Shown: positions 16,212 to 63,828 of the stretch, piece after piece
How the letters are laid out: the number at the start of each line of letters is the position of its first letter
Numbering within the stretch: the stretch's first letter is position 1
Sequence record: LR756508.1
Strand: one strand, 5' to 3'
DNA length: 64,000 bases
Position numbers and translations under genes: made by a program
Notes under the pieces: model-generated
The model's database searches: none
What the model was told of the DNA's origin: nothing
Seen by the model: the letters and a program-made list of their open reading frames with translations, nothing else

Positions 16212-16532
16212 ATGAAAATTAAAGAGTCCGAAATTAAAGAGTTAATTCGCAGTACAATTCAAGAAGAAGTTCAAGATCTAAAAGAAGCCGAAAAGTATCG
16301 AGATTTTTTTATGAACTCTCTGAGAAAAGCTGGTGATATTCTTGATAAAGAAGTGAGTTCTCCGCGCGACCTGACTGATGAAGAAAGAAAGGTCTTCTTC
16401 AGTTTTATTGATACGAAGTGGGATGGAGAAAATGGCGATGTTGAAGACATTGACCTTGATCTTGAAAATATGCTCGGTGAAGCGAAAATTAGAGAGCGAG
16501 TGAGAAAAGAAATAAAGTCTTTTGTTAGCTAA
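16212..16532 (+). CDS. Small leader-motif head/core-associated protein
   Basis: Starts MKIKESEIKELIRSTIQEE. A similar helix sits at the C-terminus. Confidence 0.6.
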   Translation: MKIKESEIKELIRSTIQEEVQDLKEAEKYRDFFMNSLRKAGDILDKEVSSPRDLTDEERKVFFSFIDTKWDGENGDVEDIDLDLENMLGEAKIRERVRKEIKSFVS

Positions 16533-16549
16533 CCAACCACTGAACCGAT

Positions 16550-16861
16550 ATGTGGAGTCGTATAAAAAACTTGTTTTCTTCCATAACAACTATAAAAAAA
16601 GCATTAAGTCATATATGGAATGGCATCGCGATGCTTAGAGACTGGTGGAAAAAAAGTGAGATAGAAGAGGAAGAACAAAAAACAAAAAAAGAAAAGAAGG
16701 CTGAAGACAAAAAACAAAAAGAGATTGAGAAGGACCTCGAAAAAAGTAAAAAAAGATTAGAAGACTTAAAAGAAAGGAAAGGTGACGGGTTAACTAAAGA
16801 AGAACAGATGGAAAAAGAGGAGTTAAAAGATTATTTTGATAACCTAACTGGACACAGATAA
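16550..16861 (+). CDS. Amphipathic-anchor coiled-coil protein (possible spanin component)
   Basis: N-terminal amphipathic segment and charged coil. Stop overlaps the next start; lies near the holin-like gene. Confidence 0.3.
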   Translation: MWSRIKNLFSSITTIKKALSHIWNGIAMLRDWWKKSEIEEEEQKTKKEKKAEDKKQKEIEKDLEKSKKRLEDLKERKGDGLTKEEQMEKEELKDYFDNLTGHR

Positions 16862-17265
16862 TGTTCAAAAAACAAGTATTTTTCATACTTTTTGTTTTGC
16901 TTTTTTTACCGGCGAGCACTTTAGCTCAAACCGACACATTTGAAAATACTGCTCCAAGTGATACAATTTGTTTTAAGGTAGAACAGGCGAACTTAATAAA
17001 ACAGAAAGTTGAAAAGCTCCAGTATAGAGATTCGTTAAACACAGAAATAATAAATGAGCTAGAGTTTCAAGTAAAAAGACTTGAAGATAAAGCTCGGTCA
17101 CTTGAAAAAGAGGTAACACTTACCGAAAAGCAGCTTGAGCTTTACAAGAAACGGATAAAGCACACTGAAAACGAACACGGAAAACGAAATATGGAGGCTA
17201 AATTGTGGTTTTATACTGCTGGCGGCGTGGCCGGTGGTGTTCTTATGTCATTACTATTTTTCTAA
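16861..17265 (+). CDS. Signal-peptide protein with C-terminal TM (possible spanin component)
   Basis: MFKKQVFFILFVLLFLPASTLA signal, coiled coil, C-terminal LWFYTAGGVAGGVLMSLLFF. Confidence 0.35.
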   Translation: MFKKQVFFILFVLLFLPASTLAQTDTFENTAPSDTICFKVEQANLIKQKVEKLQYRDSLNTEIINELEFQVKRLEDKARSLEKEVTLTEKQLELYKKRIKHTENEHGKRNMEAKLWFYTAGGVAGGVLMSLLFF

Positions 17266-17297
17266 CGTTAGAATCCAAATGAATCGTGAGAGTTCTC

Positions 17298-17891
17298 ATG
17301 GAAAAACAAGAACGAAAACTTAGAGAGTTTATCCGAAGGAAAGTCCATAACCTTCTTAACGAAAGTTCTGGCACAGATGGAGGTTCTTCGGAAAAAGCAA
17401 TTCGAAAAGAGGTAAGAAGTGTCATTCATGAGCTTCTGGCTGAGTCTAATGGAAATCAGAAGACTTTGAATGAAGGAGTAATGGGTATGGCCGATATGCC
17501 TGCCGTTAATCCTGCAAACTCTTTTTCAAAACAAGGGAAGGAAAACTTTTCTTATGATCCAAATGCCGTAAGTCAGATGGCAAAGCGAGATCGCCAGTCT
17601 GCAGGTGCCTCTACGCAGTCTAATACGCTTCGAAGTGACAGCGACTTGAAGCAGGATCAAGATTACCAGACTGGTCCAAACAAAACTGGATACGATTCTT
17701 CTCAGGGGGAGAGCGAAAAAGTGATTTTTGAAAATCAAGAGTCAGGTGATAGGGCTTCCCTTTGGATCGAAGGCAACCAGTTGGTCTGCGAATACGAGTC
17801 GAAAAGTAAAGGAAGCCAAAAGACCAAACTTAGCGAAGAAAGGACCCGAGAGATCCTTGAAAAGATCCTCAACGACAACTTCCAAATGTAG
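17298..17891 (+). CDS. Leader-motif hypothetical protein
   Basis: MEKQERKLREFIRRKVHNLLNE, with the helix repeated as EKAIRKEVRSVIHELLAE. ATG at 17298 preferred over GTG at 17286. Confidence 0.6.
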   Translation: MEKQERKLREFIRRKVHNLLNESSGTDGGSSEKAIRKEVRSVIHELLAESNGNQKTLNEGVMGMADMPAVNPANSFSKQGKENFSYDPNAVSQMAKRDRQSAGASTQSNTLRSDSDLKQDQDYQTGPNKTGYDSSQGESEKVIFENQESGDRASLWIEGNQLVCEYESKSKGSQKTKLSEERTREILEKILNDNFQM

Positions 17892-17949
17892 GTCTATTTT
17901 AAATGGTTATACAAATCTCTTTTTTTCTTCCTTTTAGAAGAGAAAAGTA

Positions 17950-19572
17950 TTGCCTGCTGATCAGCAACTTAAAGATCAGATCGTAGAGGAGTATATCAAA
18001 TGCGCAGATAATCCTGAGTATTTTCTTCGGAACTATGTCTACATCCAACATCAGGAGCTTGGGCGCATTCTGTTTGATCTTTATGGCTTTCAGGAAAGGT
18101 CCTTAGAAGAAATTCGAAAGCATAGGTATAACATTATCCTGAAAGCACGTCAGATGGGGATTTCAACTCTTGTTGCAGGCTATTCTCTGTGGATGGCTCT
18201 TTTCAATAATGAAACCAAGATATTAGTGGTTTCAATGAAAAGAGATGTAGCTAAAAACCTCGTTCAAAAAGCGAAGTTTGCTCACGATAATCTTCCCGTT
18301 TGGATGCGGGAAGAGAAGGTTGAGGACAATAAAACATCTATAGGTCTATCAAACGGTAGTAAAATATTTGCCGAGTCTACTTCAGGTGATGCTGGAAGGT
18401 CTGAGTCCTTGTCCATGCTTATTATTGATGAGGCAGCGTTCATTGATGACGTAGAAGAGCTTTGGTCTGCCGCAAAACCTACTCTTGACGTTGGAAATGG
18501 TCGAGCGATTGTGCTTTCAACCCCCAAAAATGTGGGGAGTTGGTTCCACAAGCAGTGGAGCCAGGCAATTTCGGGATCAAAAAAACTGAGTGGCAAGGAT
18601 GATGTATGGGAAGGATCTGGAACTAATAATTTTCATCCAATTAAACTGCACTGGTCTCTTCACCCAAATCGAGATACTGAGTGGAGGCAAGAGCAAGACA
18701 CCACCCTTGGACCAGATAAGGCAGCCCGAGAATGCGATTGTAATTTCTCAAGTTCCGGTGATAATGTAGTTGATATTGGAGTCCTTGAATGGTATGAAGA
18801 GAATACTGTTGAAGAGCCGAAAGAGAAGAGGTTAGTAAGAGGCTCTGATGACCTGTGGGTATGGGAGGAACCAGAGCCGTCTGAAAATTACGTGCTTTCC
18901 GCCGATGTGGCAAGAGGCGACGGAGATGATTTTTCTACCTTCCATGTGTTTTCAGTTGAAGACTTAGATCAGAAAATGGAGTATCAAGGAAAAATTACTC
19001 CAGAGACTTTCGCAAATCAGATTTATACGCAAGCATCTTATTATAATGATGCTTTAGTTGTAGTAGAGAGGAATAGTTTTGGGCGGTCTGTTCTTCAAGA
19101 GCTAATAGATAGGGGGTATAGAAATATACTCTATACGTCCAACGACCTTTCACTTGTTGACATAAGAAAAACAAGAGACATTAACGAGGGAAGGAAGACA
19201 AAGCCCGGACTCGATACGAACAGAAAAACGAGGCCACTTATAATATCTCGCATGAAAGAGTTCATGCGAAATAAGCACTGTAATATTAGAAGTTCAAGAC
19301 TTATTGAAGAATTTCGGACATTTGTTTGGAAGGGTGACAAGCCTCAGCACATGCCAGGGTATAACGATGATCTTGTTATGGCTGCAGCATTTGGAATATG
19401 GGTAAGAGACAGTGCTTTAAAGTATCAAGACCAGCTTAATGACGTTACGAAAAAGACTCTGGAGCGATTTTCTACTGGAAAGGGCCTGTATACTTCCAAA
19501 GGAAAAACCGAGGACCCTTACACGGTGAGCCAGGATGGGAAAAAGCACGACATTCGGTGGCTTTTTGAGTAA
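17950..19572 (+). CDS. gp17: Terminase large subunit
   Basis: ILKARQMGIST (Walker A region), IIDEAAFI (Walker B), ADVARGDGDDFS and DDLVMA (RNase H-like nuclease). TTG start. Confidence 0.95.
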   Translation: MPADQQLKDQIVEEYIKCADNPEYFLRNYVYIQHQELGRILFDLYGFQERSLEEIRKHRYNIILKARQMGISTLVAGYSLWMALFNNETKILVVSMKRDVAKNLVQKAKFAHDNLPVWMREEKVEDNKTSIGLSNGSKIFAESTSGDAGRSESLSMLIIDEAAFIDDVEELWSAAKPTLDVGNGRAIVLSTPKNVGSWFHKQWSQAISGSKKLSGKDDVWEGSGTNNFHPIKLHWSLHPNRDTEWRQEQDTTLGPDKAARECDCNFSSSGDNVVDIGVLEWYEENTVEEPKEKRLVRGSDDLWVWEEPEPSENYVLSADVARGDGDDFSTFHVFSVEDLDQKMEYQGKITPETFANQIYTQASYYNDALVVVERNSFGRSVLQELIDRGYRNILYTSNDLSLVDIRKTRDINEGRKTKPGLDTNRKTRPLIISRMKEFMRNKHCNIRSSRLIEEFRTFVWKGDKPQHMPGYNDDLVMAAAFGIWVRDSALKYQDQLNDVTKKTLERFSTGKGLYTSKGKTEDPYTVSQDGKKHDIRWLFE

Positions 19573-19587: not shown

Positions 19588-19890
19588 ATGAAGTTGACTG
19601 AAAGGCGGCTTAAGAGAATTATACTTGATGAATTTTCTGCTCTTTCCGAAGACGAGAAGTGGGCAAAAAACATCGATGTGGACCGAGGAGAAATGCATAA
19701 AACATTAGATGTACCTGAAGACAAAAAGGTAAGCACCTATTATACTTCAGGCGAGCAGTTGGCTCGTGATCTCATAGATGCTAAAGGTAGAGAATAGGCT
19801 TCAGGAATGATTAACTTTGCTGCCAACTTTAATGGCGAAGATAATATTTTTGATAGGGTACAAAGAGCATTAAGCAGAATTGATAAATAA
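19588..19890 (+). pseudogene. Leader-motif small protein interrupted by one in-frame TAG (19795..19797)
   Basis: The frame continues GRE*ASGMINFAANFNGEDNIFDRVQRALSRIDK* and ends 9 nt before the next ATG. Confidence 0.55.
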
Positions 19891-21762: not shown

Positions 21763-24700
21763 ATGGCAAAAGAAACAAGATCTACATTAGGAAAGGCACT
21801 TTCAAGACTCTTCTCTTCTAATATAGTCGTTAGAAATCTTGGAGGAAACCAGCTCAAAATTGTCGATCCCTCCAATATCCAAAGCGTAGCAAGCAAATAC
21901 TACGAGACAAAATATAAAGGGCTTCACTCGTATAACGAAGGAGGTAGAGCGCACCGCCAACACCAGCAGGCTCCAGGTAGCAACATTGGCTACCTTTCAG
22001 AGAGAACTGGCCTGTATCGCGATTATGAAACGATGGATACCGATGCCATTATTTCTGCTGCTCTTGATATGTACGCCGACGAGGCGTGCGCAGAAAACGA
22101 GTATGGAAATGTCTTGACTATTGACGCAGGGGATCAAGAAATAAAAGACATTCTCCACAATCTCTTTTACGAGATTCTTGATATTGAGTTTAACCTCAGG
22201 TGGTGGGTTCGTACCTTAACAAAGTATGGCGATTGTTACCTCAAACTTTCAATTTCCGACGAGTATGGAGTCGTAAGCGCAGAACCGATGTCGCCTTTTG
22301 AAGTTGAAAGGATGGAGCGAACCGACTCAGACGATCCTTACTCTGTTACGTTTAAGCATAAAGGATTTTCAAACCAGCCAGAGTATGAATTCTGGCAGGT
22401 TGCACACTTCCGTCTTTTGTCGGATGGAAACTATCTGCCATACGGGAAGTGCCTGGCACCCGAAACAAAAGTTTCTACTGAGTTCGGAGAAAGGAGTATT
22501 TGTAATATTGAGCCAGGGGATTCGGTCTGGACTTATGATTATGAAAACGAGAAGTTTGAGCTTAGCACAGTGAAAAACACTAAGTGCTCAGGTGAAAAAG
22601 AATTAATTAAAATCTCAACGAAATATAACTATGTAAGGTGCTCGAAAAACCATCCTGTCTTAGTAGTTGATAAAGAAACGAGAGAGTATTGTTACAAGAA
22701 AGCGGCTAATTTATTAGTTGGAGATCTTTTGGTCCAGTCAGATAATCAAGAAACTGGAAGTTTTGGGGGTGTTGAAGGAAAAGATGCCGCTCTTTCGCCT
22801 GTAAAGTCAGTGAGAAAAAGCGGAAAAGAAGATGTCTGGGATATCCAAGTTAATTCTAACAATAACAACTTTGTAGCGAATAGAACAGTTGTTCATAATT
22901 CCGTTTTAGAGGGTGCAAGAAGAACTTGGAAACAGCTCTGCCTGCATGAACAAAGTCGCATAAAAACTGCGGATGGCCCTAAGAAAATTAAAAATGTGAC
23001 CTCCGAAGACAAAGTATACTCTTTTGATCCAGAGAGTGGCGACTTGGTTAAAACATCCGTGAAAGCCTGCATGGAAATGGGAAGTCAGGACACCTATACA
23101 GTCTCGACAAAGACTAGACAAATAAGAGCTACTGATCGCCACGGACTTTTAGTCTTTAACAAAGATAAGAATTTTCATTATAAGGCAGTGGAGAATCTCC
23201 AAACTGGCACGGATAAGTTAATCGTGCCGAAAGACGGTGGGAGCCATGAACTGCAAAATATTAGAAGTGTTGAGTTATTCGAAGAAAACTCAAAGACTTA
23301 TGACTTGGAGGTAGAGAACGATCTTCATAATTTTGTAGCCGATGGAGTAGTTTCTCATAACACTCTGCTAGAGGATGCCATGCTTGTCCACCGCATCATG
23401 AGGGCTCCAGAAAAAAGAATCTTTCGTATTGACGTGGGGAATATCGAGCCCGATGCAGTTGACACGTTTATGGATCAAATTGTCCAGGAGATAAATAAAA
23501 CTCCACTTATTGATCCAGAGACGGGGGAGTATAACCTGAAGTATAATATGCAGAATATGATTGAGGACTATTACCTTCCTGTTCGGGGCGATGAGTCTGG
23601 CACCGAGATCGACACTCTTTCGGGGCTTGAGTATCAGGCGATTGAAGACGTCGAATACTTGCGGAAGAAGATGATGACTGCTCTCCGCATTCCAAATGCA
23701 TTCCTTGGATACGAAAAAGAACTTGAAGGAAAATGCCTTCACCCCGATACCAGAATCGAACTTCTCTCGGGTGAAAGTATGAGGGTGGAAGATATAGCCG
23801 TAGAGTATGAGACAGATGAAGATTCTCTCTGGACCTATTCTTATGATTTTGAGGAAAACCGAGTGGTTCCTGGAAAAATTGTGGAAGCCGAGAAAACGAG
23901 AGAAAACGTTGAAATCGTTGAGGTTGTGTTAGACAACGGCGAAACGGTGAAGACAACTCCAGACCACGACTTTATCCTTCAGGACGGCACGGAAGTGGAA
24001 GCTCAAAATCTGGAGGAAGGCGATAGCTTGAGGACGATTGAGAGAAGGAAAAAAGAGCTTGGGAATAACACCTGCGAATACGAACAGGTATGGCAACCAG
24101 AGGAGGAAAAGTGGGAGTGGACCCACAAGATGGTTGACAGGTATTTTAATGGTGAAATTGAAAGAAACGGTTATAGCGAAGATGGGCGATTTTCTTACGA
24201 TAATCTTACCGTCGTACACCACGAAGATTTTGATCGCTACAACAATTCTCCGAACAACCTGCGGAGAATGAACTTCAAGGATCATCGGGAGCTTCATAAC
24301 GAAAATCTTTCCGATGAGTGGTACGAGTGGCAAGATAAAAGAGCCGAGCTAAATAAAACTGAGGAGTATAGGGAGTGGGCCTCAAAGAGAGCGAAGAGGT
24401 GGATGGAGGAAAATCCTGAAAACAAATATAACATTCGTGACGTCTGGCTCTCACTCTCTCCCGAAGAGCGTTCTGAGATTGTAGCGGATGGGTGGAACGA
24501 AGAAAGAAAGAAAAAACAAGCAGAGCGAGCTCGTGAAAACAGCCGAGCCCAGCAGATGCTTGAAGCGAAAAGAGAAAATAATTTCGAGAGCACTCTTGAA
24601 GGCGAAGACCATCCAAGACATCGAAAACGACCTTCATTTGATGAAATCGTTGAGTTTGTTGAAAACTATGAGGGCGATCCAGAAGATGTTTCAACAATAT

Positions 24701-25923
24701 GGAATTTGGAAGATTCATTCGGCTTGACAAAGTATATTCTTCAAGAAGTAATTGAAGAAAACGGTTATAATTGTACGCAATTTATGAATGAGTTTTGGGG
24801 CTTCAAGCGTGGTAGACCGAAAGATCTGCATCCCGAGACTTTTATTGATCTTTCGGCTTCCTGTGAGGATATGGAGGAATTTGTTGATAGAATTGATGCT
24901 TATTCGAAGCGAACTGCCAAGTCGATAGTAGAAAATAATGGGTTTGAGTTTGAAGAGTGGAAAGAGAATATTTTAGGGTCTCGATATAATCACAAAGTGG
25001 TTGAAGTTAACGAGCTAGAGGAAAAAGTTGACACATATAACATTGAAGTAGAGGATAAAAATAATAACCATAACTTTTTGACTGCCACAGGTTTAACCCT
25101 CAAAAATTCGACGTTGAGTCAGCAAAGTATTAAATTCGCCAATCAGGTAAAGTATATTCAAAAGATTGTTGTTTCCGAGCTAAAGAAAATAGCGATGATC
25201 CATCTTTTCTCCCTCGGAATCAGAGACCAGAGGCTAGTTCAGTTTGACTTATCCCTCACCTCCCCTTCCACGGTCCAGGAGAGTGAATACCTCGACCTAC
25301 TCAGCCAAAAAGTTGATCTGGCGAGAACTATTACCGAACTCCCATTGTTTTCTACCGACTGGATTTACAAGAAGCTCTTCAACCTTTCCGACGACGAAAT
25401 TGAGAGGCAGAGAGACCTCAAGAAAGACGATTGGAAGAGGCAGTTTCAACAGGACCAGATCACGAGAGAAGGAAACGACCCAGTTAAAACTGGCCAGTCT
25501 TTTGGAACTCCTCACGACCTCGCCCAGAGTGGTTCTGCAAACATTAAACCTCTTGATCTTGAGAAGAAAGAAAAAGAAAAGCAGAAGAATAAAGCCGTAA
25601 AGAATATGCAGAAATCGAAGCAGAATAAACTGGGAGGAGATCCGCTAGGAAAAGATAAAGCATTTGATAACTCCAACCTGCGAACTGGCGACCCAGACTA
25701 CGAACAAAGATACAGAGATAGAAGGGGACTTCCTGTCGATCACTTTCTGCCAGGAAAAAAGAAAGACTTGATAAAAGAAAGCCTGTCCTCTATAGAAGAC
25801 GCAGATAAAATTGAAGAAGCCATAGAAAATATCGATGCTGCCGGAGGAGTTTCCAAAGAAGACCTTTCAGACTATGAAAAAGGTACATTTATGGATGAAA
25901 GTGTGTTGGATCACAGCGTGTAA
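21763..25923 (+). CDS. gp20: Portal protein with three inteins (about 637 aa after splicing)
   Basis: gp20 motifs YETMDTDAII, LLEDAMLVHRIMRAPEKRIF, EDYYLPVRGDESGTEIDTLSG, YLRKKMMTALRIP. Confidence 0.95.
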   Translation: MAKETRSTLGKALSRLFSSNIVVRNLGGNQLKIVDPSNIQSVASKYYETKYKGLHSYNEGGRAHRQHQQAPGSNIGYLSERTGLYRDYETMDTDAIISAALDMYADEACAENEYGNVLTIDAGDQEIKDILHNLFYEILDIEFNLRWWVRTLTKYGDCYLKLSISDEYGVVSAEPMSPFEVERMERTDSDDPYSVTFKHKGFSNQPEYEFWQVAHFRLLSDGNYLPYGKCLAPETKVSTEFGERSICNIEPGDSVWTYDYENEKFELSTVKNTKCSGEKELIKISTKYNYVRCSKNHPVLVVDKETREYCYKKAANLLVGDLLVQSDNQETGSFGGVEGKDAALSPVKSVRKSGKEDVWDIQVNSNNNNFVANRTVVHNSVLEGARRTWKQLCLHEQSRIKTADGPKKIKNVTSEDKVYSFDPESGDLVKTSVKACMEMGSQDTYTVSTKTRQIRATDRHGLLVFNKDKNFHYKAVENLQTGTDKLIVPKDGGSHELQNIRSVELFEENSKTYDLEVENDLHNFVADGVVSHNTLLEDAMLVHRIMRAPEKRIFRIDVGNIEPDAVDTFMDQIVQEINKTPLIDPETGEYNLKYNMQNMIEDYYLPVRGDESGTEIDTLSGLEYQAIEDVEYLRKKMMTALRIPNAFLGYEKELEGKCLHPDTRIELLSGESMRVEDIAVEYETDEDSLWTYSYDFEENRVVPGKIVEAEKTRENVEIVEVVLDNGETVKTTPDHDFILQDGTEVEAQNLEEGDSLRTIERRKKELGNNTCEYEQVWQPEEEKWEWTHKMVDRYFNGEIERNGYSEDGRFSYDNLTVVHHEDFDRYNNSPNNLRRMNFKDHRELHNENLSDEWYEWQDKRAELNKTEEYREWASKRAKRWMEENPENKYNIRDVWLSLSPEERSEIVADGWNEERKKKQAERARENSRAQQMLEAKRENNFESTLEGEDHPRHRKRPSFDEIVEFVENYEGDPEDVSTIWNLEDSFGLTKYILQEVIEENGYNCTQFMNEFWGFKRGRPKDLHPETFIDLSASCEDMEEFVDRIDAYSKRTAKSIVENNGFEFEEWKENILGSRYNHKVVEVNELEEKVDTYNIEVEDKNNNHNFLTATGLTLKNSTLSQQSIKFANQVKYIQKIVVSELKKIAMIHLFSLGIRDQRLVQFDLSLTSPSTVQESEYLDLLSQKVDLARTITELPLFSTDWIYKKLFNLSDDEIERQRDLKKDDWKRQFQQDQITREGNDPVKTGQSFGTPHDLAQSGSANIKPLDLEKKEKEKQKNKAVKNMQKSKQNKLGGDPLGKDKAFDNSNLRTGDPDYEQRYRDRRGLPVDHFLPGKKKDLIKESLSSIEDADKIEEAIENIDAAGGVSKEDLSDYEKGTFMDESVLDHSV
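22450..22899 (+). mobile_element. Mini-intein 1 in portal (150 aa)
   Basis: YGK|CLAPETKV...NFVANRTVVHN|S. No endonuclease. Confidence 0.9.
22939..23361 (+). mobile_element. Mini-intein 2 in portal (141 aa)
   Basis: KQL|CLHEQSRI...HNFVADGVVSHN|T. No endonuclease. Confidence 0.9.
23734..25107 (+). mobile_element. Intein 3 in portal with HNH endonuclease (458 aa)
   Basis: EGK|CLHPDTRI...HNFLTATGLTLKN|S, with internal VVHHEDFDRYNNSPNNL. Confidence 0.85.
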
Positions 25924-27095: not shown

Positions 27096-27602
27096 ATGTT
27101 TGAAGAAATTCCAGATCAGCTCAGAAGTTGGAGAGTTGATCAAGTAATCGAGGCTTTGAGCTTCCGAAAAGTATTCGGCTGGAATAGTGAAGAAAGAAAA
27201 CAGGTTGAAAAAGAGCTTTTGAAAGTCTCTAAAAGTAAAGTTTCTCACCCTTACGAGCGGGAAGTTTATCTTCCAGAAGTTTGGGATTATCTTTCCGGTG
27301 AGGTCAAGGAGTACATTGTTAAAGCTTACAACTCCGATAAGTATTCTTACGAGGAGCCGATAAAAATGGAAAATGTAGAAAAACTGGTTCGCGAAGAGTT
27401 AAGTAAAGTGCTGGGCGAAGAAAAAACTGGTTTTGATCCTGAGAAGATGTTGAAGCTTGGAGAAAAAAATAAGCGCATCGAGAAAGAAATAAAGAAAAGA
27501 GCTGAAAACCAGAGGCGACCGCACGAGAACGTTTTGAAGTTTGTTTTTGAACGCTTTGTTTTAGAAAACGGCGAATTAAATCGTAAGTATCAAAAAATAT
27601 AG
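27096..27602 (+). CDS. Hypothetical protein with internal leader-like helix
   Basis: Internal MENVEKLVREELSKVLGE. Confidence 0.55.
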   Translation: MFEEIPDQLRSWRVDQVIEALSFRKVFGWNSEERKQVEKELLKVSKSKVSHPYEREVYLPEVWDYLSGEVKEYIVKAYNSDKYSYEEPIKMENVEKLVREELSKVLGEEKTGFDPEKMLKLGEKNKRIEKEIKKRAENQRRPHENVLKFVFERFVLENGELNRKYQKI

Positions 27603-28350: not shown

Positions 28351-28403
28351 TCTGTCAGTGTTTTGTATTCAATTTAATATTAAACTCAAGCAGACAAGAC
28401 CTG

Positions 28404-30512: not shown

Positions 30513-30513
30513 A

Positions 30514-55298: not shown

Positions 55299-56110
55299 TG
55301 GCAGACTTAAAAGAAGCACTTATTAGCGAGGGCCACTCGGGAAGAAGCAGACCTTTAAGTAGGGAAAGATTCGAAGAAATGAAAGAATCGAAGGCACCTG
55401 GCTATAGTTTAGATAACGACAGAATTTTCCGTGGCATCCGCGGTTTTGGCTATGATTTTGCTATGGTTGATCCAACTGGACACAGGGAACGAAAAAGTGC
55501 CCATGCCCAGACGAATTATTATACTTTGATTATTAACAATAGTTTTGCGTGGAGAAGATATCCGAGGCGAGAACTTTCTTGTACTACAAGTTCTTCGAAA
55601 GCTGCGGGGTATGGCGATGTTTATCTGGTAGTGCCATACGATGGAGTCGAATGGGGAATTTGTCCAGACAAAGACATTTTCTTTTCTTTCGGTAGGCTCC
55701 AAAAAGAAGTTGGATTTGATAACATTGATCGATTTATGAGCGTAATTCGCAGTTTCTTTAGCGAATACCTTGATTCTGTTCCATATGAGAGTGACTTTAC
55801 AGATTTTAAGTTCCACCTGGAAAAACTTGGAGATAAGCTGGCTGAAATTGGTTTCTTTGAGGAAAATTACAGTGACATGTTAAAAGATGGATTTGAAAAC
55901 TTGTGGGGACCTTATAAGAACTCAAAGTTTTTTGAGTACAACGAGTTTGATCAGTTTGTTTTTGATTTAATTGATCCAGAGAAAAATGGTTTTGAAGTAC
56001 AAGAAACTTGGAGTGGAGCACCAGACAACAGGGAAGTGTGGACGGATGGGCCTTGTCTTCTTGTAAGGCTTGCTTTTCTCAAAGAGAATCCAGACGAGTT
56101 GGACTTGTAG
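55298..56110 (+). CDS. Putative R-S-E ADP-ribosyltransferase, paralog 3
   Basis: MADLKEALISE; IFRG...LSCTTSSSKAAGYGDVYLVVP...REVW. Best match to the R-S-E pattern. Confidence 0.65.
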   Translation: MADLKEALISEGHSGRSRPLSRERFEEMKESKAPGYSLDNDRIFRGIRGFGYDFAMVDPTGHRERKSAHAQTNYYTLIINNSFAWRRYPRRELSCTTSSSKAAGYGDVYLVVPYDGVEWGICPDKDIFFSFGRLQKEVGFDNIDRFMSVIRSFFSEYLDSVPYESDFTDFKFHLEKLGDKLAEIGFFEENYSDMLKDGFENLWGPYKNSKFFEYNEFDQFVFDLIDPEKNGFEVQETWSGAPDNREVWTDGPCLLVRLAFLKENPDELDL

Positions 56111-56133: not shown

Positions 56134-56898
56134 ATGAAGTTGAAGGGAATACTTAAAGAGGCAAAAAGTGATCAACTTGTTGGCAAAGTAAAGGAAGATT
56201 GCTCTGACTTTATTAGCGTAAATCGAAGTGCCTTGGAGAGTGGAAATTATCTTATGAGGGGAACCGATAAAGCTTATCGGGGAGACCGAATTGTCAAGAA
56301 AGATTTTAGACTTAGAAAGAAAGTAAAGGGTAGCAATTTTATGACCTGGTTTTATGAAAAATGGAAACCAGATTCCCAACCTTCAAGGCAGGAAATGGTC
56401 CCGACTCAGTTTGGTGAGTTAACGGGAATGTTTAGCACAAAAAATACATTTGCCGTTTTTCCAATTGGAAGTAGGTATAAGCTACATTATACTTCAGAAG
56501 TTGAAGACTTCAATAGCCTTAATCCGTATATTAATAAATTTCTTGATCCGCAGAAGCAGATTGAGAAAGCGAAGTTGAACTATGCCGATCTGCCAGAAGA
56601 AGTAAAAGACGAGTTAAAGCGGGCCATAGATTTGTATATGGAAGAAAAGAGCTGGAACTACGATAAAATTGTTGAGCTTTATGAAGAGCTATGGGAAGTG
56701 CAGAAGTTTTTAGGAAAGTATAGAAATGACGTAAAAGAAGAAATAGAAAGATTAAAAAAGTCTGCAGAGAACTATTTTCAAAACAGCAAATTTACGAAAA
56801 AACTTCCAGGTGAAAAAGGGTTGGAGGTGAATGTTTATGCTCCTGATGGCTGGTATTATGTGGATAAAGATATAACTGAAAACAAACTGATCGGTTAA
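56134..56898 (+). CDS. Putative ART-fold protein, paralog 4 (subgroup A)
   Basis: MKLKGILKE; LMRGT...PSRQEMVPTQFG...TFAVFP...LEVNVYAPDGWYYV. Confidence 0.55.
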   Translation: MKLKGILKEAKSDQLVGKVKEDCSDFISVNRSALESGNYLMRGTDKAYRGDRIVKKDFRLRKKVKGSNFMTWFYEKWKPDSQPSRQEMVPTQFGELTGMFSTKNTFAVFPIGSRYKLHYTSEVEDFNSLNPYINKFLDPQKQIEKAKLNYADLPEEVKDELKRAIDLYMEEKSWNYDKIVELYEELWEVQKFLGKYRNDVKEEIERLKKSAENYFQNSKFTKKLPGEKGLEVNVYAPDGWYYVDKDITENKLIG

Positions 56899-57604
56899 GT
56901 GATTAAGTTCAAAAAACTTCTTTTTGAGGACGGTAGGGTTAACGCGGCGCGAGAAGTAGATAAACTGCTACAAACCCAGTTTCAAAATGACCTACCGAAA
57001 CTCTATAGAGCATCAAAGAGAGAGTTTGAAGCTTCTTATAAAATTTTGAGGTTTGGAGATGAAATTCGAGAACCAAAGGGATCTTCTTATGACGCACAGA
57101 TTATATTAGATGGAGTAGCTGAAGCGGTTAATCCTAATATCCCAAAGAGGTTTGAGTCAAAATTTGCTACGACTGAATATTTTGAAGGAAGTGGGTTAGT
57201 ATTCGGCACAAACACCTACGTGGTGTTCCCAGATAAAAATTCAGATATCGCTAGTTTTTCTGGAGATACAATTGATCTTCGTGGGGACATTGACGCCATG
57301 ATAGCTGACTTTTCTGGAAGGGAGCCTCAATATCCGAAGTTTAAAGAAATGCTGGAGAAAATTCATTCGGTGGACGAAAAGGAATTGGAAAGACGTAAGC
57401 GGTGAACTTGAAAATGGAGGACTTTTTGGAACAAAAATGTTAGAAAGTATTGAGAATTATTTCAAAGCTATGAAACGTGGGGCAAAACAAGACTCAGATG
57501 AAATAATGTTTTCGGGAGATCAATATTTGTATGTCAAACCTGATTTTTTTGATGAGCACTTTCGGAGGTCCGGGGGTGAATGGGAATTAAGACCTGATTA
57601 TTAG
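56899..57604 (+). pseudogene. ART-fold paralog 5 (subgroup B) split by a +1 frameshift
   Basis: Frame 0 (LYRAS...PKRFESKFATT) stops at 57405. The +1 frame encodes IENYFKAMKRG...DEIMFSGDQYLYV...SGGEWEL* to 57604, homologous to the C-termini of paralogs 6 and 7. Confidence 0.7.
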
Positions 57605-57606: not shown

Positions 57607-58386
57607 ATGAGATTTAAAAGACTTTTAGATCAAAAAGAAAAACTAAAAAAGATCGAGTCTCTTCTCCAATCTGATTTCCGAGGTTCGCTGTATCCAACAA
57701 TTTATCGAGGAACCCGCAGTTCAGTAGACGTTTTTGACGTCCTGAAAATAAGAAAAGATAGAAAGCCCTCAGGCACCAGACTTGAAGCCCAGGGACTTGT
57801 TGATGCCTATGAAAACAACGTCTATAAAGACTGGCCAAAAAGAAGTGAAAGTAAGTTTGGCTCGCCAGATCGAGTTTCTGCAGGAGGATATGGGCCACAT
57901 GAGGTAGTTGTGTTTCCAGAAAAATCGGCAGATGTATGCTGGATTGAATACGATCCTACCACTGAGTTTTTCCACGACAGTTACAGCGCTTTGAAGACCA
58001 TTATCGATTCTAAAATGTTTGGAGAGTTTTTGGACGTTTTGGAAACAAATGGCTTCGAGAAGCTAAGTCAATTTTTGTATAAAACAGAAAAGTTCTATCG
58101 AGACGAGATAAGTTATGAAAAGTATAACAAGTATCTGAACGATAATATTGAAAGGCTGAGAAGTAAATATGAAGACTTGAAAAACGAAAAGACTGAACTC
58201 CAACATCAAAGAGGAGAGCTGCTGAAGGTTTTTCGGGCTGTTGAAATGTATTTTTCCACGCTTAAAGAGGGAGCAAATAAGGGGGCTTATGAAATTATTT
58301 TTGATGGAGAAAGATATTTGAGGATAAATGCTGACCTGTTTGAAGATAACTTTTCTTGGAGTGGAAAAAGGTGGAAGGTGAGTTAG
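57607..58386 (+). CDS. Putative ART-fold protein, paralog 6 (subgroup B)
   Basis: MRFKRLL; IYRGT...PKRSESKFGSPDRVSAGGYG...VVFP...YEIIFDGERYLRI. Confidence 0.55.
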   Translation: MRFKRLLDQKEKLKKIESLLQSDFRGSLYPTIYRGTRSSVDVFDVLKIRKDRKPSGTRLEAQGLVDAYENNVYKDWPKRSESKFGSPDRVSAGGYGPHEVVVFPEKSADVCWIEYDPTTEFFHDSYSALKTIIDSKMFGEFLDVLETNGFEKLSQFLYKTEKFYRDEISYEKYNKYLNDNIERLRSKYEDLKNEKTELQHQRGELLKVFRAVEMYFSTLKEGANKGAYEIIFDGERYLRINADLFEDNFSWSGKRWKVS

Positions 58387-58452
58387 GTTTTTTTGATATT
58401 TAATATTAAACGAACGATTAAATACAGCTAATTAACTTAAATGTGAGTGCTT

Positions 58453-58671
58453 ATGCCAGCGAAGTCAAAAAACCAGAAGCATTTTTTTCAACTTGCCTTA
58501 GGAGTTAAAACAGGTTCAATTTCTAAAAGTGAGGTTTCAAAAGATGTAGTAGATGCGGCAGAAAGCATGAAAAAGAGCGATTTGGAAAAGTATGCTAAAG
58601 AGCCAGTGAAAGAAAGGGTTTTACACATAATACGCGAAGAGCTACAAAAAATCCTTTCCAACCAGAGATGA
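58453..58671 (+). CDS. DUF3008-like small protein with C-terminal leader-like helix
   Basis: MPAKSKNQ...AESMKKSDLEKYA, then KERVLHIIREELQKIL. Confidence 0.6.
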   Translation: MPAKSKNQKHFFQLALGVKTGSISKSEVSKDVVDAAESMKKSDLEKYAKEPVKERVLHIIREELQKILSNQR

Positions 58672-61906: not shown

Positions 61907-62224
61907 GACACGTTCAAGAAAACCCTCGGCTTTAGCCGAGGGATGAATTGAACCACTTTGAGCAAGAAGACGAAGACAGAAAACGACCAGATATAGTGAC
62001 AGGAAAGCTGGTCTTGGAAAGTATGTCGAGGAAACCCGTCTACCTGGAGTTCATGGCGTCTCCCAGGGAAGTTCTGCAAGCTCCGATCTATTGGAGTTCA
62101 AGAGCTTTCATGTAGCTCGCGGAGTGGAAGTCACTGCAAGCTCAAACTTCTGCTAAGAACGCGAGAAAGATGCTTTGGAGATCTTGGAGCAGAATCTCCT
62201 CGCTTTAGCGAGGGGAGACGTCAA
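61907..62224 (+). mobile_element. Non-autonomous IS200/IS605 mini-element, copy B (left end + probable omegaRNA scaffold + right end)
   Basis: Left hairpin CCCTCGGC-TTTA-GCCGAGGG then ATGAATTGAACCACT. Right hairpin TCTCCTCGC-TTTA-GCGAGGGGAGA then CGTCAA. No transposase or TnpB ORF. Confidence 0.8.
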
Positions 62225-62260
62225 TGGATAGGATGATTAAATAAAGAAGAGAACAAAAAA

Positions 62261-63139
62261 GTGTCGCTTACTAATCAAAAGTCTTCGAAGAGTATCCGAG
62301 GCCAAAAGTTCGAAAGTTCAACTGGTACTCTTTCAAAAGTCATTTTGAGACTCGGATTTGTTTTTGGCGATCATGGAACTGTTGAATATATGTTTCCTGA
62401 TCATCAAGGTTCTGATAAAGTTTATGACGCTAACAAATTCTTCAGAGTTATAGAAAACGGAAGACGGTTCAAAGCCTGGGTCAAATCCAACGAGAAGTCT
62501 GCTAAAGAAGAGTTTGAAGAAAACGGCATAAAATACAATCAAAAAGCAAAACAGTTTGATAAAACAAATGTAGGTATCCTGCTTCCTGTGTTTCGTGGAG
62601 AAATGAATGTCAGGCGAGGAGTGTTGTGGCATGAAGAGGCAGGAACAGATGTATCCTCTATTTGTGATGTGATGCCATCAATAAAGTCTTTTGTCTTAAA
62701 CCAGCTTAAAAAGAAAGGTAGCATGAAGAGCAAAAAAAGAGACCGTTACAAAAAAGACGTCAAAGAAAAGAAAATTAGAGAAATAGTAAGGAGTGAGATT
62801 AAAAAGCACTTGAACGAAGCTGATGATGTAGAAAACATTAATAATAAAGTTCATGAGTTTTGGAAAGAACTCACTGTTTTTAATACTAAGATTGCTGAAA
62901 ACTATTTTCAAGATATTGCTACCGATTTAGATAAGATGCAGACGACTTGGGATAAATCTGGAAGGGTTAAAAAAGAGTGGATGCAACTCAAACAAGAATT
63001 CAATTCTTTTATCGAGGGTGTTAACCGTTACAAATCATTTTTTAAAGAGACCATGGACAGCCAGTCCATATCAAAGGTAGAAGATACAGAAGATGGATAC
63101 TATCGTGTAGAACGAGGTGGCGACTACCATGAAATGTAG
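62261..63139 (+). CDS. Hypothetical two-domain protein with internal leader helix
   Basis: Internal KEKKIREIVRSEIKKHLNE. GTG start. Confidence 0.55.
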   Translation: MSLTNQKSSKSIRGQKFESSTGTLSKVILRLGFVFGDHGTVEYMFPDHQGSDKVYDANKFFRVIENGRRFKAWVKSNEKSAKEEFEENGIKYNQKAKQFDKTNVGILLPVFRGEMNVRRGVLWHEEAGTDVSSICDVMPSIKSFVLNQLKKKGSMKSKKRDRYKKDVKEKKIREIVRSEIKKHLNEADDVENINNKVHEFWKELTVFNTKIAENYFQDIATDLDKMQTTWDKSGRVKKEWMQLKQEFNSFIEGVNRYKSFFKETMDSQSISKVEDTEDGYYRVERGGDYHEM

Positions 63140-63199
63140 TTTAAGACTAACTTAAACCACTACTAAAGTCGACTTTAGTAATTCACAGTGAAAGATAAT

Positions 63200-63526
63200 A
63201 TGCAACTTTCCGAAGAAGAGCTTAGAAATATTGTAAGAGAAGAAGCAATTTACGGGGTCAAAGAAAAAGAGATTCTTGACTATTTGGAGGAAGAAATCTT
63301 GTCAATGTATGAGGACTATTCAACCGAGCGAAGCGGTGATCTTCTTCTCGTCAATGACGAAAAAGGAGAAACGTTTGAGATTGCGGTGAAAAAAGCTCTT
63401 GATGTGAACCCAACAGTAGAAGTTCGTTACAGTAAACTGGAAGACTCTAAGTATGCCAGTAGAAAAACGTTCTACCTAAGTCAAGTTGATGAGTTGAAGC
63501 ACACGTTGAAACACCGCCAGTTTTAA
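63200..63526 (+). CDS. Leader-motif small protein
   Basis: MQLSEEELRNIVREE. ATG at 63200 preferred over GTG at 63188. Confidence 0.6.
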   Translation: MQLSEEELRNIVREEAIYGVKEKEILDYLEEEILSMYEDYSTERSGDLLLVNDEKGETFEIAVKKALDVNPTVEVRYSKLEDSKYASRKTFYLSQVDELKHTLKHRQF

Positions 63527-63558
63527 GCATTTAAAACTTTTTCTAAAAGAGATATCAC

Positions 63559-63828
63559 ATGAGGCTGAATAAAGAAATTATTAGGGGAGTAGTTGAGGAA
63601 GAACTTGCTGAAGTTAAACTTAGAAAGAAAGTAAGAGAGAAAGCTAAAGATATAATCAAGGAAAAAGAAAGAAGAAAAGCTGCTTCTCAGGCTCTTAATG
63701 GGATCCAGTCTAAAATCAAAGAGCAGAAGAAGAATATTCCAGATGAGTTTAAAGACTCTCTTGGTTCAGAACTTGATAAATTGAGTGAGAAAATTCAACA
63801 GTTGATGGGAGACTATAACCTAGAATAA
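63559..63828 (+). CDS. Leader-motif helical protein
   Basis: MRLNKEIIRGVVEEELAEVKLRKKVREK. Confidence 0.6.
   Translation: MRLNKEIIRGVVEEELAEVKLRKKVREKAKDIIKEKERRKAASQALNGIQSKIKEQKKNIPDEFKDSLGSELDKLSEKIQQLMGDYNLE

What the first reader, a model, noticed from the sequence alone, without database searches (positions are those of the whole stretch)
16212..63828. About 30 unrelated proteins share a capsid-targeting-like leader ending in L/I-x-E
Seen: a long class, e.g. MKLTERRLKRIILDE (19588), MKLTERKLRNLVKEVLKE (28404), MKVTEEKLRKVIRREIKE (30757), MKIQEQKLRGIIKEE (31070), MKEQKLRRIIREIIQE (31841), MNIKKSKLRKIIREE (37569), MKEKRLRRFIREE (38520). A short class, e.g. MRLKEILLE, MKLKGILKE, MKFKELLKE, MQLKNRLTE. 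The same helix also occurs internally or at C-termini (21.4 kb, 28.8 kb, 58.6 kb, 62.8 kb). Downstream domains are unrelated. Known: T4 internal proteins carry a ~10 aa capsid-targeting sequence ending in Glu, and gp21 cleaves after L/I-x-E. Inference: a modular address tag loads a large, freely exchangeable cargo set into the prohead. It could be used to package foreign proteins.
Basis: partly seen in the sequence, partly recalled or inferred. Interest (0 to 1): 0.8.

Follow-up and report, generated by a model that had tools for sequence, protein, structure and literature searches.

The report
Shared head-targeting leader on phage proteins
A 484-kb T4-like phage puts the same short N-terminal helix, ending in the cutting site of its head protease, on dozens of otherwise unrelated small proteins. 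This is most likely an address tag that loads them into the virus head, and the same tag is widespread in uncultured relatives.

Summary
The window is LR756508.1 positions 124001-188000, a 484-kb uncultured T4-like phage.

**Long leader.**
- Eighteen window genes, 33 genome-wide, start with a ~22-aa amphipathic helix: MK[LI]xE+KLR+[IV][IV]+EE[IL]++[VL]L+E.
- A leader HMM gives 40 hits in the genome against 1 in each decoy set.
- Their downstream parts share no BLAST similarity and no Pfam family.
- Conservation is at the protein level, because codons vary.
- The genes cluster around terminase, portal, a gp21-type (S77) protease, a gp22-like scaffold and the gp23 capsid gene (Fisher p = 3e-24).

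**Wider spread.** The same leader sits on more than 100 unrelated cargo families in IMG/VR relatives. It is usually next to T4-like head genes, and each phage has its own "dialect".

**Short leader.** The short class (M[KR][LF]Kx[IL]LxE) mainly marks one large paralog family, so "unrelated" fails there. Homologs of that family in Agrobacterium phage Atu_ph07 were found in purified virions by mass spectrometry.

**Verdict.**
- Most likely this is a cleavable prohead-core targeting propeptide, working like the T4 capsid targeting sequence.
- It is not homologous in sequence to the T4 tag.
- Packaging and cleavage of the long class are inferred, not shown.
- Novelty: a new variant of a known kind.

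The parts
16212..16532 (+). long-leader gene (106 aa), MKIKESEIKELIRSTIQEE; weak second helix copy at its C-terminus (16479-16526)
   Evidence: leader HMM 20.8 bits at residues 1-22; C-terminal copy 5.6 bits
17298..17891 (+). long-leader gene (197 aa), MEKQERKLREFIRRKVHNLLNE|SSG; further helix-like segments are seen by eye
   Evidence: 22.4 bits; sequence
17950..19572 (+). large terminase (context)
   Evidence: Pfam Terminase_6N 9.7e-18
19588..19797 (+). long-leader gene (69 aa), MKLTERRLKRIILDE
   Evidence: 24.7 bits
21391..21453 (+). internal leader copy (MKKLKEKRLRRVIREIVNE) in the C-extein of the intein-containing 19900-21681 protein
   Evidence: 15.6 bits, residues 498-518; intein
21763..25923 (+). 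gp20-type portal with inteins (context)
   Evidence: Pfam Portal_T4 7.7e-52 and Intein_splicing
27360..27419 (+). internal leader copy in the 27096-27602 protein (ENVEKLVREELSKVLGEE|KTG)
   Evidence: 14.8 bits
28404..28838 (+). long-leader gene (144 aa) with a second helix copy at its C-terminus (28785-28832)
   Evidence: 26.3 and 15.4 bits
28851..29123 (+). long-leader gene (90 aa)
   Evidence: 24.4 bits
29124..29408 (+). long-leader gene (94 aa)
   Evidence: 27.0 bits
29398..29910 (+). long-leader gene (170 aa). It is a conserved head-module gene (TGNVAGYQTPFAF motif) with degenerate-leader homologs in Mel-JY01 and immuto.
   Evidence: 21.3 bits
30757..31023 (+). long-leader gene (88 aa)
   Evidence: 28.5 bits
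31070..31492 (+). long-leader gene (140 aa); the cargo is an ORFan
   Evidence: 27.8 bits; only itself found among 5.8 billion proteins
31841..32383 (+). long-leader gene (180 aa). The cargo domain is bounded by IIQE|V and KINE|S. Homologs elsewhere are multi-module proteins with leader helices between modules.
   Evidence: 21.3 bits; AF2 model has helix 2-16, a break, then the domain
32480..34204 (+). gp21-type prohead protease (S77) interrupted by an intein; the presumed processing enzyme
   Evidence: Pfam Peptidase_S77 5.4e-26; GELDHP and GISSRGLGS motifs conserved against T4 gp21
35996..36448 (+). short-leader gene (150 aa), MQLKNRLTE|A; the cargo is unrelated to the YRG family
   Evidence: PSSM 14.0 against a null maximum of 9.5
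36462..36707 (+). long-leader gene (81 aa)
   Evidence: 25.9 bits
36707..37027 (+). long-leader gene (106 aa)
   Evidence: 22.5 bits
37027..37536 (+). long-leader gene (169 aa)
   Evidence: 24.1 bits
37569..38072 (+). long-leader gene (167 aa)
   Evidence: 27.1 bits
38136..38507 (+). long-leader gene (123 aa)
   Evidence: 19.8 bits
38520..38783 (+). long-leader gene (87 aa)
   Evidence: 21.6 bits
46157..47836 (+). acidic gp22-like scaffold, a candidate binding partner of the leaders (inferred)
   Evidence: N-terminus LLKEAIADAQTI aligns with T4 gp22 LKEQLIAEAQKI; conserved upstream of the MCP in relatives
47904..49538 (+). gp23-type major capsid protein with a predicted maturation site L-K-E(62)|A
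   Evidence: Pfam Gp23 2.7e-82; alignment to the T4 gp23 LTE|A site
53696..54439 (+). short-leader gene, MRLKEILLE|N; distant branch of the YRG superfamily
   Evidence: PSSM 26.6
54453..55298 (+). short-leader gene, MRLKNVLLKE; same branch
55298..56110 (+). YRG-family gene with a variant tag, MADLKEALISE
56134..56898 (+). short-leader gene, MKLKGILKE|A
   Evidence: PSSM 24.5
56899..57604 (+). split YRG-family gene: 56899-57405 (GTG start, IKFKKLLFE) plus the 57437-57604 C-terminal piece
   Evidence: HMM positions 1-160 and 213-263 respectively
57607..58386 (+). YRG-family gene, MRFKRLLDQ
58624..58659 (+). C-terminal helix copy (VLHIIREELQKILSNQR) of the 58453-58671 protein
   Evidence: 9.5 bits; conserved in the relative L094
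58802..59575 (+). YRG-family gene, MKFKELLKE|Q; modelled at pLDDT 95.8
62759..62818 (+). internal leader copy (KEKKIREIVRSEIKKHLNE|ADD) in the 62261/62390-63139 protein
   Evidence: 15.5 bits
63200..63526 (+). long-leader gene (108 aa)
   Evidence: 26.1 bits
63559..63828 (+). long-leader gene (89 aa)
   Evidence: 21.3 bits

Best explanation
The ~22-aa N-terminal amphipathic helix is a prohead-core targeting propeptide. Consensus: MK[LI]xE+KLR+[IV][IV]+EE[IL]++[VL]L+E. The 9-aa short tag, M[KR][LF]Kx[IL]LxE, plays the same role.

**Proposed mechanism (inferred).**
1. During head assembly the helix docks the attached protein onto a common partner inside the scaffolding core. The gp22-like scaffold at 46157-47836 is the likeliest partner. 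The capsid interior is the alternative.
2. After the shell closes, the gp21-type protease (32480-34204, active once its intein is spliced out) cuts after Glu in [LIV]-x-E. The sites lie at the end of the leader and probably inside it.
3. This frees the cargo domain and chops the leader into peptides that can leave the head.
4. Internal copies act as cleavable separators of multi-module polyproteins. C-terminal copies lack the Glu and act as uncleaved anchors.
5. Some cargos are probably transient core or scaffold filler. Others are probably retained and ejected into the host with the DNA.

**What is shown.** The motif, its modularity, its linkage to the head module, the presence of the protease, and virion residence of the short-tag family's homologs in another phage.

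**What is inferred.** Binding, cleavage, packaging and ejection for the long class.
For: 1. **Significance.** 40 HMM hits against 1 in each decoy set, all on the coding strand.
2. **Modularity within the genome.** The 33 cargos share no BLAST similarity. 20 of them have no Pfam family passing its curated cut-off, and one tested cargo is an ORFan.
3. **Protein-level selection.** All six Leu codons and four Arg codons are used at the conserved L8 and R9, as in the genome at large. There is no shared upstream DNA motif.
4. **Location.** 31 of 113 genes in 140-244 kb carry the leader, against 2 of 585 elsewhere (Fisher p = 2.6e-24). The window clusters lie between portal and protease and between protease and MCP, where T4 has its core genes 67, 68 and 22.
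5. **Enzyme and specificity.** The phage has an S77 protease with conserved catalytic motifs. The MCP site LKE|A aligns with the T4 gp23 site LTE|A. T4 gp21 cuts after L/I-x-E, and the T4 capsid targeting sequences are 10-19-aa N-terminal propeptides that load unrelated proteins (PMC9026906).
6. **Fixed cleavage-type sites.** [LIV]-x-E has its Glu at leader positions 5, 14 and 21/22, against about 2% per position in other genes. A polar or Gly-rich linker follows.
7. **Spread.**
   - A degenerate DNA pattern hits more than 120 IMG/VR stretches.
   - 79 of 80 fetched loci have HMM hits, up to 8 per locus.
   - 43 of 80 carry T4-like terminase, portal, protease or MCP within the locus.
   - 151 leader ORFs fall into 111 cargo clusters.
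8. **Interchangeable leaders.**
   - The cargo of 189655 (long leader) has a short tag, MITFKDILRE, in L011.
   - 220727 (long) and 220078 (short) share a cargo.
   - The cargo of 31841 sits behind an internal leader copy in L171 and in P0160.
9. **Phage-specific dialects.** Leaders on non-homologous cargos are 63% identical within a phage against 49.5% between phages (0 of 1000 permutations). This is expected for one co-evolving reader.
10. **Helix properties.**
   - The leaders are strongly amphipathic, with a hydrophobic moment of 0.46 against 0.25.
   - The low-confidence AF2 model of 31841 has a low-confidence helix 2-16, a break at the predicted site, then the domain.
11. **Short tag.**
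   - L7 and E9 are at least 90% conserved across 92 members that are only about 20-30% identical overall.
   - Atu_ph07 homologs gp53-gp63 match the family HMM at E 1e-14 to 1e-35 and start MRWEQLTE.
   - They were all detected in purified virions with 3-31 unique peptides (PMC6102473 Table S5).
Against: - No virion or N-terminal proteomics exists for any long-leader protein.
- The only cultured members of the clade, Mel-JY01 and immuto, have only degenerate leaders, and no other cultured homologs were found.
- The leader has no detectable similarity to T4 gp67, gp68, gp22, gp21 or Alt N-termini.
- [LIV]-x-E is partly dictated by helix amphipathicity, so it does not prove cleavage.
- Most cargos are acidic, 23 of 33 with pI below 6, unlike the basic T4 IPII and IPIII.
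- C-terminal copies end without Glu.
- Two leader genes lie far from the head region, at 401.7 and 440.3 kb. Those at 189-195 kb are interleaved with thioredoxin, tRNA-synthetase and helicase genes.
- The binding partner is unknown.
- Expression timing could not be inferred.
Confidence: 0.6

Rival explanations
1. The helix is an assembly or oligomerisation module of a diversified set of scaffold and core proteins (functional analogs of T4 gp67, gp68 and gp22). These proteins build and size the large prohead core by helix-helix bundling. They are then degraded and expelled. On this reading there is no delivered cargo and the downstream parts are mostly filler.
For: - The genes occupy the gp67/gp68/gp22 positions of the head module.
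- Several proteins carry two or three helix copies, which could cross-link a network (16212, 17298, 28404, 218098).
- Many cargos are short, acidic and low-complexity.
- Conserved leader proteins next to the protease in relatives are Ala/Gly/Lys-rich and scaffold-like.
- [LIV]-x-E occurs at three positions inside the leader, as in T4 core proteins that are chopped into peptides.
Against: - Several cargos look like folded domains. The 31841 domain reaches pLDDT 72-80, and the short-tag family model reaches 95.8.
- Cargo turnover and ORFan status fit arms-race effectors better than structural filler.
- The Atu_ph07 homologs of the short-tag family persist in mature virions.
Confidence: 0.22
2. 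The helix is a docking motif for a hub unrelated to the virion, for example a host or phage polymerase, chaperone, unfoldase or ribosome. On this reading the tagged proteins are host-takeover or regulatory factors that act in the cytoplasm and are never packaged.
For: - Some leader genes lie among non-structural genes (189-195 kb, 401.7 kb, 440.3 kb).
- There is no direct virion evidence for the long class.
- Phage-specific dialects only require some common reader, not necessarily the prohead.
Against: - There is strong linkage to T4-like head genes both in this genome (p = 2.6e-24) and in 43 of 80 independent IMG/VR loci.
- 38 of 39 hits in MCP-anchored loci lie on the MCP strand.
- Protease-type sites sit at the leader-cargo boundary.
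- The short-tag family is found in virions.
Confidence: 0.1
3. The similarity is an artefact of composition (Lys/Glu-rich N-termini in an AT-rich genome) or of a repeated DNA element (promoter, RBS or recombination cassette) that overlaps gene starts.
For: The genome is 35-45% GC, and many phage genes start MK...
Against: - Decoy searches give 1 hit against 40.
- Synonymous codons at conserved residues are as diverse as genome-wide usage.
- Upstream regions share no motif.
- The motif recurs in phages whose MCPs are only about 50-66% identical to the window's, and in other IMG/VR phages.
Confidence: 0.02

Closest known systems
[quoted passage not shown]
   Same: - It is a short N-terminal propeptide on mutually unrelated proteins.
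- It ends in L/I-x-E.
- The phage encodes a gp21-type S77 protease, a gp22-like scaffold, and gp20 and gp23 homologs.
- The cargo genes turn over quickly.
- The short class has the same length as the T4 tag (9-10 aa).
(PMC9026906.)
   Different: - There is no sequence similarity to T4 head-protein N-termini.
- The long leader is about 22 aa, a defined amphipathic helix with three potential sites.
- Copies also occur internally and at C-termini.
- There are 33 + ~29 tagged genes per genome, against 3-4 in T4.
- The cargos are mostly acidic.
- The genes sit inside the head module instead of elsewhere.
- Function is untested.
T4 prohead core proteins gp67, gp68 and gp22
   Same: - The genes lie between portal, protease and MCP.
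- They are small proteins with multiple L/I-x-E sites.
- The 46157-47836 protein shares an N-terminal motif with gp22.
   Different: Leader proteins show no homology to gp67 or gp68, and there are far more of them, with far more diversity.
Propeptides of phiKZ-like giant phage head and ejection proteins (SPN3US gp245 substrates)
   Same: - Giant phages load many proteins into the head.
- N-terminal propeptides are removed by an essential prohead protease that cuts after Glu.
- Two SPN3US propeptides are 20 and 24 residues long (PMC10052503).
   Different: - The lineage is a different one.
- The SPN3US paper gives its own gp245 cleavage motif; the motif itself was not read here.
- Most SPN3US propeptides are 111-254 residues.
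- No shared leader across unrelated proteins has been described there.
Encapsulin cargo-loading peptides
   Same: A short transferable peptide directs diverse cargo into an HK97-fold shell. It can sit at either terminus.
   Different: Encapsulins have no portal, DNA or protease processing, and the peptide binds the shell directly and is retained. This comparison rests on general knowledge and was not tested here.
Atu_ph07 gp53-gp63 virion protein paralogs (Rak2-like jumbo phages)
   Same: - They are sequence and fold homologs of the window's short-tag family.
- They form tandem paralog arrays.
- They have a conserved 8-aa N-terminus ending L-x-E (MRWEQLTE).
- They were detected in virions.
   Different: The tag sequence differs (MRWEQLTE against MKLKxLLxE). 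N-terminal processing was not examined in that study, and no long-class leader was found in the two Atu_ph07 regions scanned.

Membership tests
T4-type capsid targeting sequence / internal protein system | Short N-terminal propeptide shared by otherwise unrelated proteins | tested here: met
   33 long-leader genes with non-homologous cargos. The short tag is on at least 10 non-family proteins.
T4-type capsid targeting sequence / internal protein system | The propeptide ends in the gp21 recognition motif L/I-x-E | tested here: met
   [LIV]-x-E has its Glu at position 21/22 in 23 of 33 leaders and at position 14 in 23 of 33, against about 2% background. L7 and E9 are at least 90% conserved in the short tag. 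Caveat: this is partly explained by amphipathicity.
T4-type capsid targeting sequence / internal protein system | The phage encodes a gp21-type (S77) prohead protease and a T4-type scaffold and capsid | tested here: met
   Peptidase_S77, Portal_T4 and Gp23 Pfam hits. Catalytic motifs are conserved. The MCP cleavage site aligns with T4's.
T4-type capsid targeting sequence / internal protein system | Sequence homology of the tag to the T4 IP/Alt CTS | tested here: inconclusive
   The leader HMM scores 1.2 bits or less on T4 gp67, gp68, gp21, gp22 and Alt. The IPI-III genes themselves were not fetched. With tags of 10-22 aa, homology cannot be decided.
T4-type capsid targeting sequence / internal protein system | The tag is necessary and sufficient to load a protein into the prohead and is removed there | not testable with these tools
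   This needs fusion-packaging and N-terminomics experiments. The only indirect support is virion mass spectrometry of the Atu_ph07 homologs of the short-tag family.
T4 prohead core proteins gp67/gp68 | Sequence homology to gp67 or gp68 | tested here: not met
   BLAST and local alignments give only chance-level scores.
T4 prohead core proteins gp67/gp68 | Encoded between the portal and protease genes | tested here: met
   The 28404-32383 cluster lies between the portal (21763-25923) and the protease (32480-34204).
Alt-like ADP-ribosyltransferase (considered for the short-tag YRG family) | ART fold or Pfam ART domain | tested here: not met
   There is no Pfam hit. The high-confidence model (pLDDT 95.8) has no PDB match (best E 0.17, TM 0.23 or less). 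In BFVD only a non-significant PolyVal ART match appears (E 0.054, probability 0.30).
Encapsulin cargo-loading peptide | Cargo peptide used by a portal-less encapsulin shell operon | tested here: not met
   The locus is a tailed-phage head module with portal, terminase and protease. The resemblance is functional only.

The most novel reading that the evidence does not exclude
The two leaders together mark about 60 genes, roughly 9% of the genome. On this reading they form a sequence-readable "packaged proteome": a large, fast-evolving arsenal of proteins and cleavable polyproteins loaded into the head and ejected with the DNA as first-wave host-takeover or anti-defence effectors. Each phage would read its own leader dialect through one co-evolving receptor in the scaffolding core. 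The same code would operate across a widespread uncultured clade of T4-like phages, so internal and ejected proteins could be predicted from sequence alone.
Probability: 0.3. Interest if true: 0.8.

Novelty: new variant of a known kind. Interest (0 to 1): 0.62.

Why it matters
It is hard to tell from sequence which phage proteins travel inside the capsid and enter the host with the DNA. In T4 it took decades of genetics.

- A conserved, recognisable leader would give a direct sequence rule for the internal proteome of a large, uncultured and environmentally widespread T4-like clade.
- It points to dozens of candidate ejected effectors per genome, nearly all of unknown function.
- It also suggests that leader helices double as protease-cleavable separators in polyproteins.
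- In practice it offers a second, sequence-unrelated packaging tag for loading proteins into laboratory phage capsids, alongside the T4 capsid targeting sequence.

Tried and rejected
1. **Alt-like ADP-ribosyltransferase idea for the short-tag family.** I suspected this from the YRG / S-x-S / E motifs. It is rejected: no Pfam hit, and a pLDDT 95.8 model has no PDB fold match.
2. **DNA repeat or promoter cassette.** Rejected by codon diversity and by the lack of a shared upstream motif.
3. **Leader against rest-of-protein conservation.** I compared orthologs in the syntenic relative L094. At 80-95% identity the pairs are too close to be informative.
4. **Searches of cultured phages.**
   - tblastn with a consensus leader, with a scaffold-like leader protein and with a globular IMG/VR leader protein gave no match.
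   - The 29398 protein finds only Mel-JY01.
   - No paper on Mel-JY01 is held.
   - So there is no proteomic data for the long class.
5. **First within- versus between-phage test.**
   - It went the wrong way.
   - The 33 diverse genome leaders dominated the within-phage class.
   - The IMG/VR leaders had been selected by a pattern.
   - I redid it on IMG/VR loci with at least 4 leaders.
6. **Structure prediction with paralogs from loci L005-L007.** I replaced them with library homologs.
7. **AF2 model of 31841.** It is only moderate (pLDDT 63.5), so I did not use it for a fold search.
8. **Late-promoter search.** TATAAATA and enriched k-mers gave nothing usable.

Full report
**Source and context.**
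- The window is positions 124001-188000 of LR756508.1, an unannotated 484,177-bp "uncultured phage" genome.
- Almost all genes are on the + strand.
- It contains a T4-type head module:
  - large terminase, 17950-19572;
  - gp20-type portal with inteins, 21763-25923;
  - gp21-type S77 prohead protease interrupted by an intein, 32480-34204;
  - gp23-type major capsid protein, 47904-49538.
- The acidic protein at 46157-47836 shares the N-terminal motif of T4 gp22 (LLKEAIADAQTI against LKEQLIAEAQKI), so it is the likely scaffold.
- The protease keeps the GELDHP and GISSRGLGS motifs of T4 gp21 on either side of the intein.
- The capsid protein has L-K-E(62)|A aligned with the known T4 gp23 maturation site L-T-E(65)|A. 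This fits a T4-like specificity, L/I-x-E (PMC9026906).
- Upstream, at 1-16 kb, are an AAA_23 protein, a glycosyltransferase and a cytidylyltransferase. None carries the leader.

**Observation, long class.**
- Eighteen window genes align without difficulty over about 22 residues.
- An HMM of these finds 40 segments of at least 9.5 bits in the six-frame translation of the whole genome, all on the + strand.
- There is a clean gap to noise, and reversed and shuffled decoys give one hit each.
- Thirty-three hits start at a Met that opens an ORF. The 15 outside the window are independent of the seeds.
- Consensus: M-K-[LI]-(S/T)-E-+-K-L-R-+-[IV]-[IV]-+-E-E-[IL]-+-+-[VL]-L-x-E.
- It is a strongly amphipathic helix, with a mean hydrophobic moment of 0.46 against 0.25 for other N-termini.
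- Internal or C-terminal copies are confirmed at 21391, 27360, 28785, 58624 and 62759.

**Unrelated cargos.**
- With the first 24 residues removed, the 33 proteins give no BLAST pair at E<0.01.
- 20 of them have no Pfam family passing its curated cut-off.
- The 31070 protein has no homolog among 5.8 billion clustered proteins.
- The cargos are small, with a median total length of 108 aa, and mostly acidic.

**Not a DNA feature.**
- Conserved L8 uses all six Leu codons and R9 uses four Arg codons, in proportions like the genome at large.
- Upstream regions share no motif.

**Location.**
- 31 of 113 called genes between 140 and 244 kb carry the leader, against 2 of 585 elsewhere (Fisher p = 2.6e-24).
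- In the window the two main clusters, 28404-32383 and 36462-38783, lie between portal and protease and between protease and capsid gene.
- T4 has its core genes 67, 68 and 22 in the same positions.

**Protease-type sites.**
- [LIV]-x-E occurs with its Glu at leader positions 5, 14 and 21/22 in 15, 23 and 23 of the 33 leaders. The same holds in 158 IMG/VR leaders. Background is about 2% per position.
- After position 22 come polar, acidic or Gly-rich residues.
- A hydrophobic residue two positions before a Glu is natural in an amphipathic helix. These sites are therefore compatible with cleavage but do not prove it.

**Spread beyond this genome.**
- Loci around capsid genes 49-66% identical to the window's contain the leader in 22 of 80 cases, and 38 of 39 hits lie on the capsid-gene strand.
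My rough estimate of the chance expectation, assuming uniform base composition, is well below one.
- In the 80 loci returned:
  - 79 have HMM hits, 178 in all and up to 8 per locus;
  - 43 carry a T4-like terminase, portal, protease or capsid gene of this lineage within the roughly 10-15 kb fetched, often directly next to the protease;
  - the 151 leader ORFs fall into 111 cargo clusters.
- The nearest cultured phages are Microcystis phage Mel-JY01 and Flavobacterium phage immuto, with terminases 42-54% identical. They have only degenerate versions of the leader.
- No cultured phage with a clear long leader was found.

**Modularity across phages.**
- The cargo of genome gene 189655 (long leader) has a homolog in L011 behind a short-type tag, MITFKDILRE.
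- 220727 (long leader) and 220078 (MKLQNILYE) share a cargo at 41% identity.
- The cargo of 16212 is, in six relatives, the C-terminal domain of a 39672-like head-module protein. It stands alone with a leader in the window and in L032.
- The cargo of 31841 is bounded by conserved IIQE|V and KINE|S. In L171 and P0160 it is followed or preceded by further leader helices inside longer proteins.
- The leader therefore behaves as a transferable module and as a separator between modules.
- Among IMG/VR loci with at least four leaders, leaders on non-homologous cargos are 63% identical within a phage against 49.5% between phages (0 of 1000 permutations). This fits one phage-specific reader, or gene conversion between leaders.
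- A moderate AF2 model of 31841 (pLDDT 63.5) has a low-confidence helix 2-16, a break at the predicted site and then a better-defined domain.

**Short class.**
- The tag M-[KR]-[LF]-K-x-[IL]-L-x-E is real, but in the window it mostly marks one superfamily:
  - 55298, 56899 (+57437, a split gene), 57607 and 58802 are clear members;
  - 53696, 54453 and 56134 are a distant branch;
  - only 35996 is unrelated.
- The family has at least 21 paralogs in this genome and 677 cluster representatives in a 1.84-billion-protein library.
- Across 92 members that are only about 20-30% identical, L7 and E9 are at least 90% conserved. That matches the best-conserved core residues.
- A PSSM built from members outside this genome scores about 29 N-termini above the null maximum. 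These include roughly ten proteins that match the family only in the tag.
- The family model is confident (pLDDT 95.8), but the fold has no PDB match. My initial ADP-ribosyltransferase idea is not supported.
- In BFVD the model matches uncharacterised paralogs of other jumbo phages, notably Agrobacterium phage Atu_ph07.
- Atu_ph07 gp53-gp63 are HMM homologs (E 1e-14 to 1e-35) with N-termini MRWEQLTE or MKWHQLTE, that is, L-x-E at residues 6-8.
- All were detected in purified virions by ESI-MS/MS with 3-31 unique peptides (Attai et al. 2018, PMC6102473, Table S5).
- This is the only experimental link to virions, and it concerns the short-tag family only.

**Interpretation.**
- In T4, N-terminal capsid targeting sequences of 10-19 residues load the mutually unrelated internal proteins into the scaffolding core. 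gp21 then removes them after L/I-x-E. The review states that this may be a general way for T4-like phages to incorporate varied proteins (PMC9026906).
- The window shows the same logic with a different, longer and much more widely used tag. I therefore favour a cleavable prohead-core targeting propeptide (confidence 0.6).
- The main rival (0.22) is that these are diversified scaffold or core proteins whose helices build the core and which are then degraded and expelled. The two readings overlap and may each hold for a subset.
- A cytoplasmic docking motif unrelated to the head (0.1) is disfavoured by the repeated linkage to head genes.
- Chance or a DNA repeat is excluded.

**Novelty.**
- I found no description of this leader in the searchable literature.
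- The leader HMM does not match the T4 head-protein N-termini tested.
- It is best called a new variant of a known kind of system.

Noticed in passing
window 19900-21681, 21763-25923, 32480-34204, 3498-4796: Inteins interrupt several genes. The portal has several Hint/intein segments plus an HNH domain. The prohead protease has an intein with LAGLIDADG. The 19900 protein has an intein with LAGLIDADG. The 3498 protein carries an intein fragment. A relative also has an intein in an SNF2 helicase.
   Followed up: partly
window 45713-45952: A 79-aa ribosomal protein S21-like gene sits between the head genes. Microcystis phage Mel-JY01 has an annotated RpsU (S21) at the equivalent position between its protease and capsid gene.
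   Followed up: no
window 60952-61818: There is a second, short (288 aa) Terminase_6N-like ORF about 41 kb downstream of the full terminase. It is conserved in the syntenic relative L094.
   Followed up: no
genome 53491(-), 74363, 187936 (window 63936 onward, cut by the window end), 198395, 405319: Five copies of a ~430-aa ORF start M[KR]LTKTLKFKL. It looks like a multi-copy mobile-element protein, and I guess it is TnpB/OrfB-like. I did not test this.
   Followed up: no
window 56899-57604; L094 7310-8074: Gene decay in the short-tag family. In the window one member is split into 168-aa and 55-aa pieces. In the 468-kb relative the ortholog of 56134 is split into 71 + 167 aa, and an extra 360-aa gene is inserted.
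   Followed up: partly
window 28373-28384 and 58399-58410; genome 243395: The palindrome TTTAATATTAAA occurs only three times in 484 kb. Each time it lies about 30-55 nt upstream of a gene carrying the helix motif (28404, 58453, 243424). It may be a promoter or operator. This is unexplained.
   Followed up: partly
window 40547-42193 and 42282-44375: Two large paralogs share an N-terminus, M[SA]RT[IQ]VPEEE.R, that is not the leader. The first matches the repeat-containing PHROG 697 'structural protein' in five stretches. They may be decoration or fibre proteins.
   Followed up: no
window 34244-35944, 49722-51434, 51539-53473: Homing-endonuclease-type genes are inserted in the head module: a DUF7487 + Mom-like protein after the protease, and an HNH endonuclease plus another endonuclease after the capsid gene.
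   Followed up: no
window-wide, upstream of starts: No Shine-Dalgarno-like sequence is visible upstream of gene starts. The regions are A-rich, as in Bacteroidota-type translation initiation, and the closest cultured relatives infect Flavobacterium and Microcystis.
   Followed up: no
genome 330232-330966, 223149-224411, 213967-214401: Short-tag proteins outside the window include a P-loop (GGPASGKT) protein and two proteins with L[YF]HVT motifs. These are candidate enzymatic cargos and were not analysed further.
   Followed up: no
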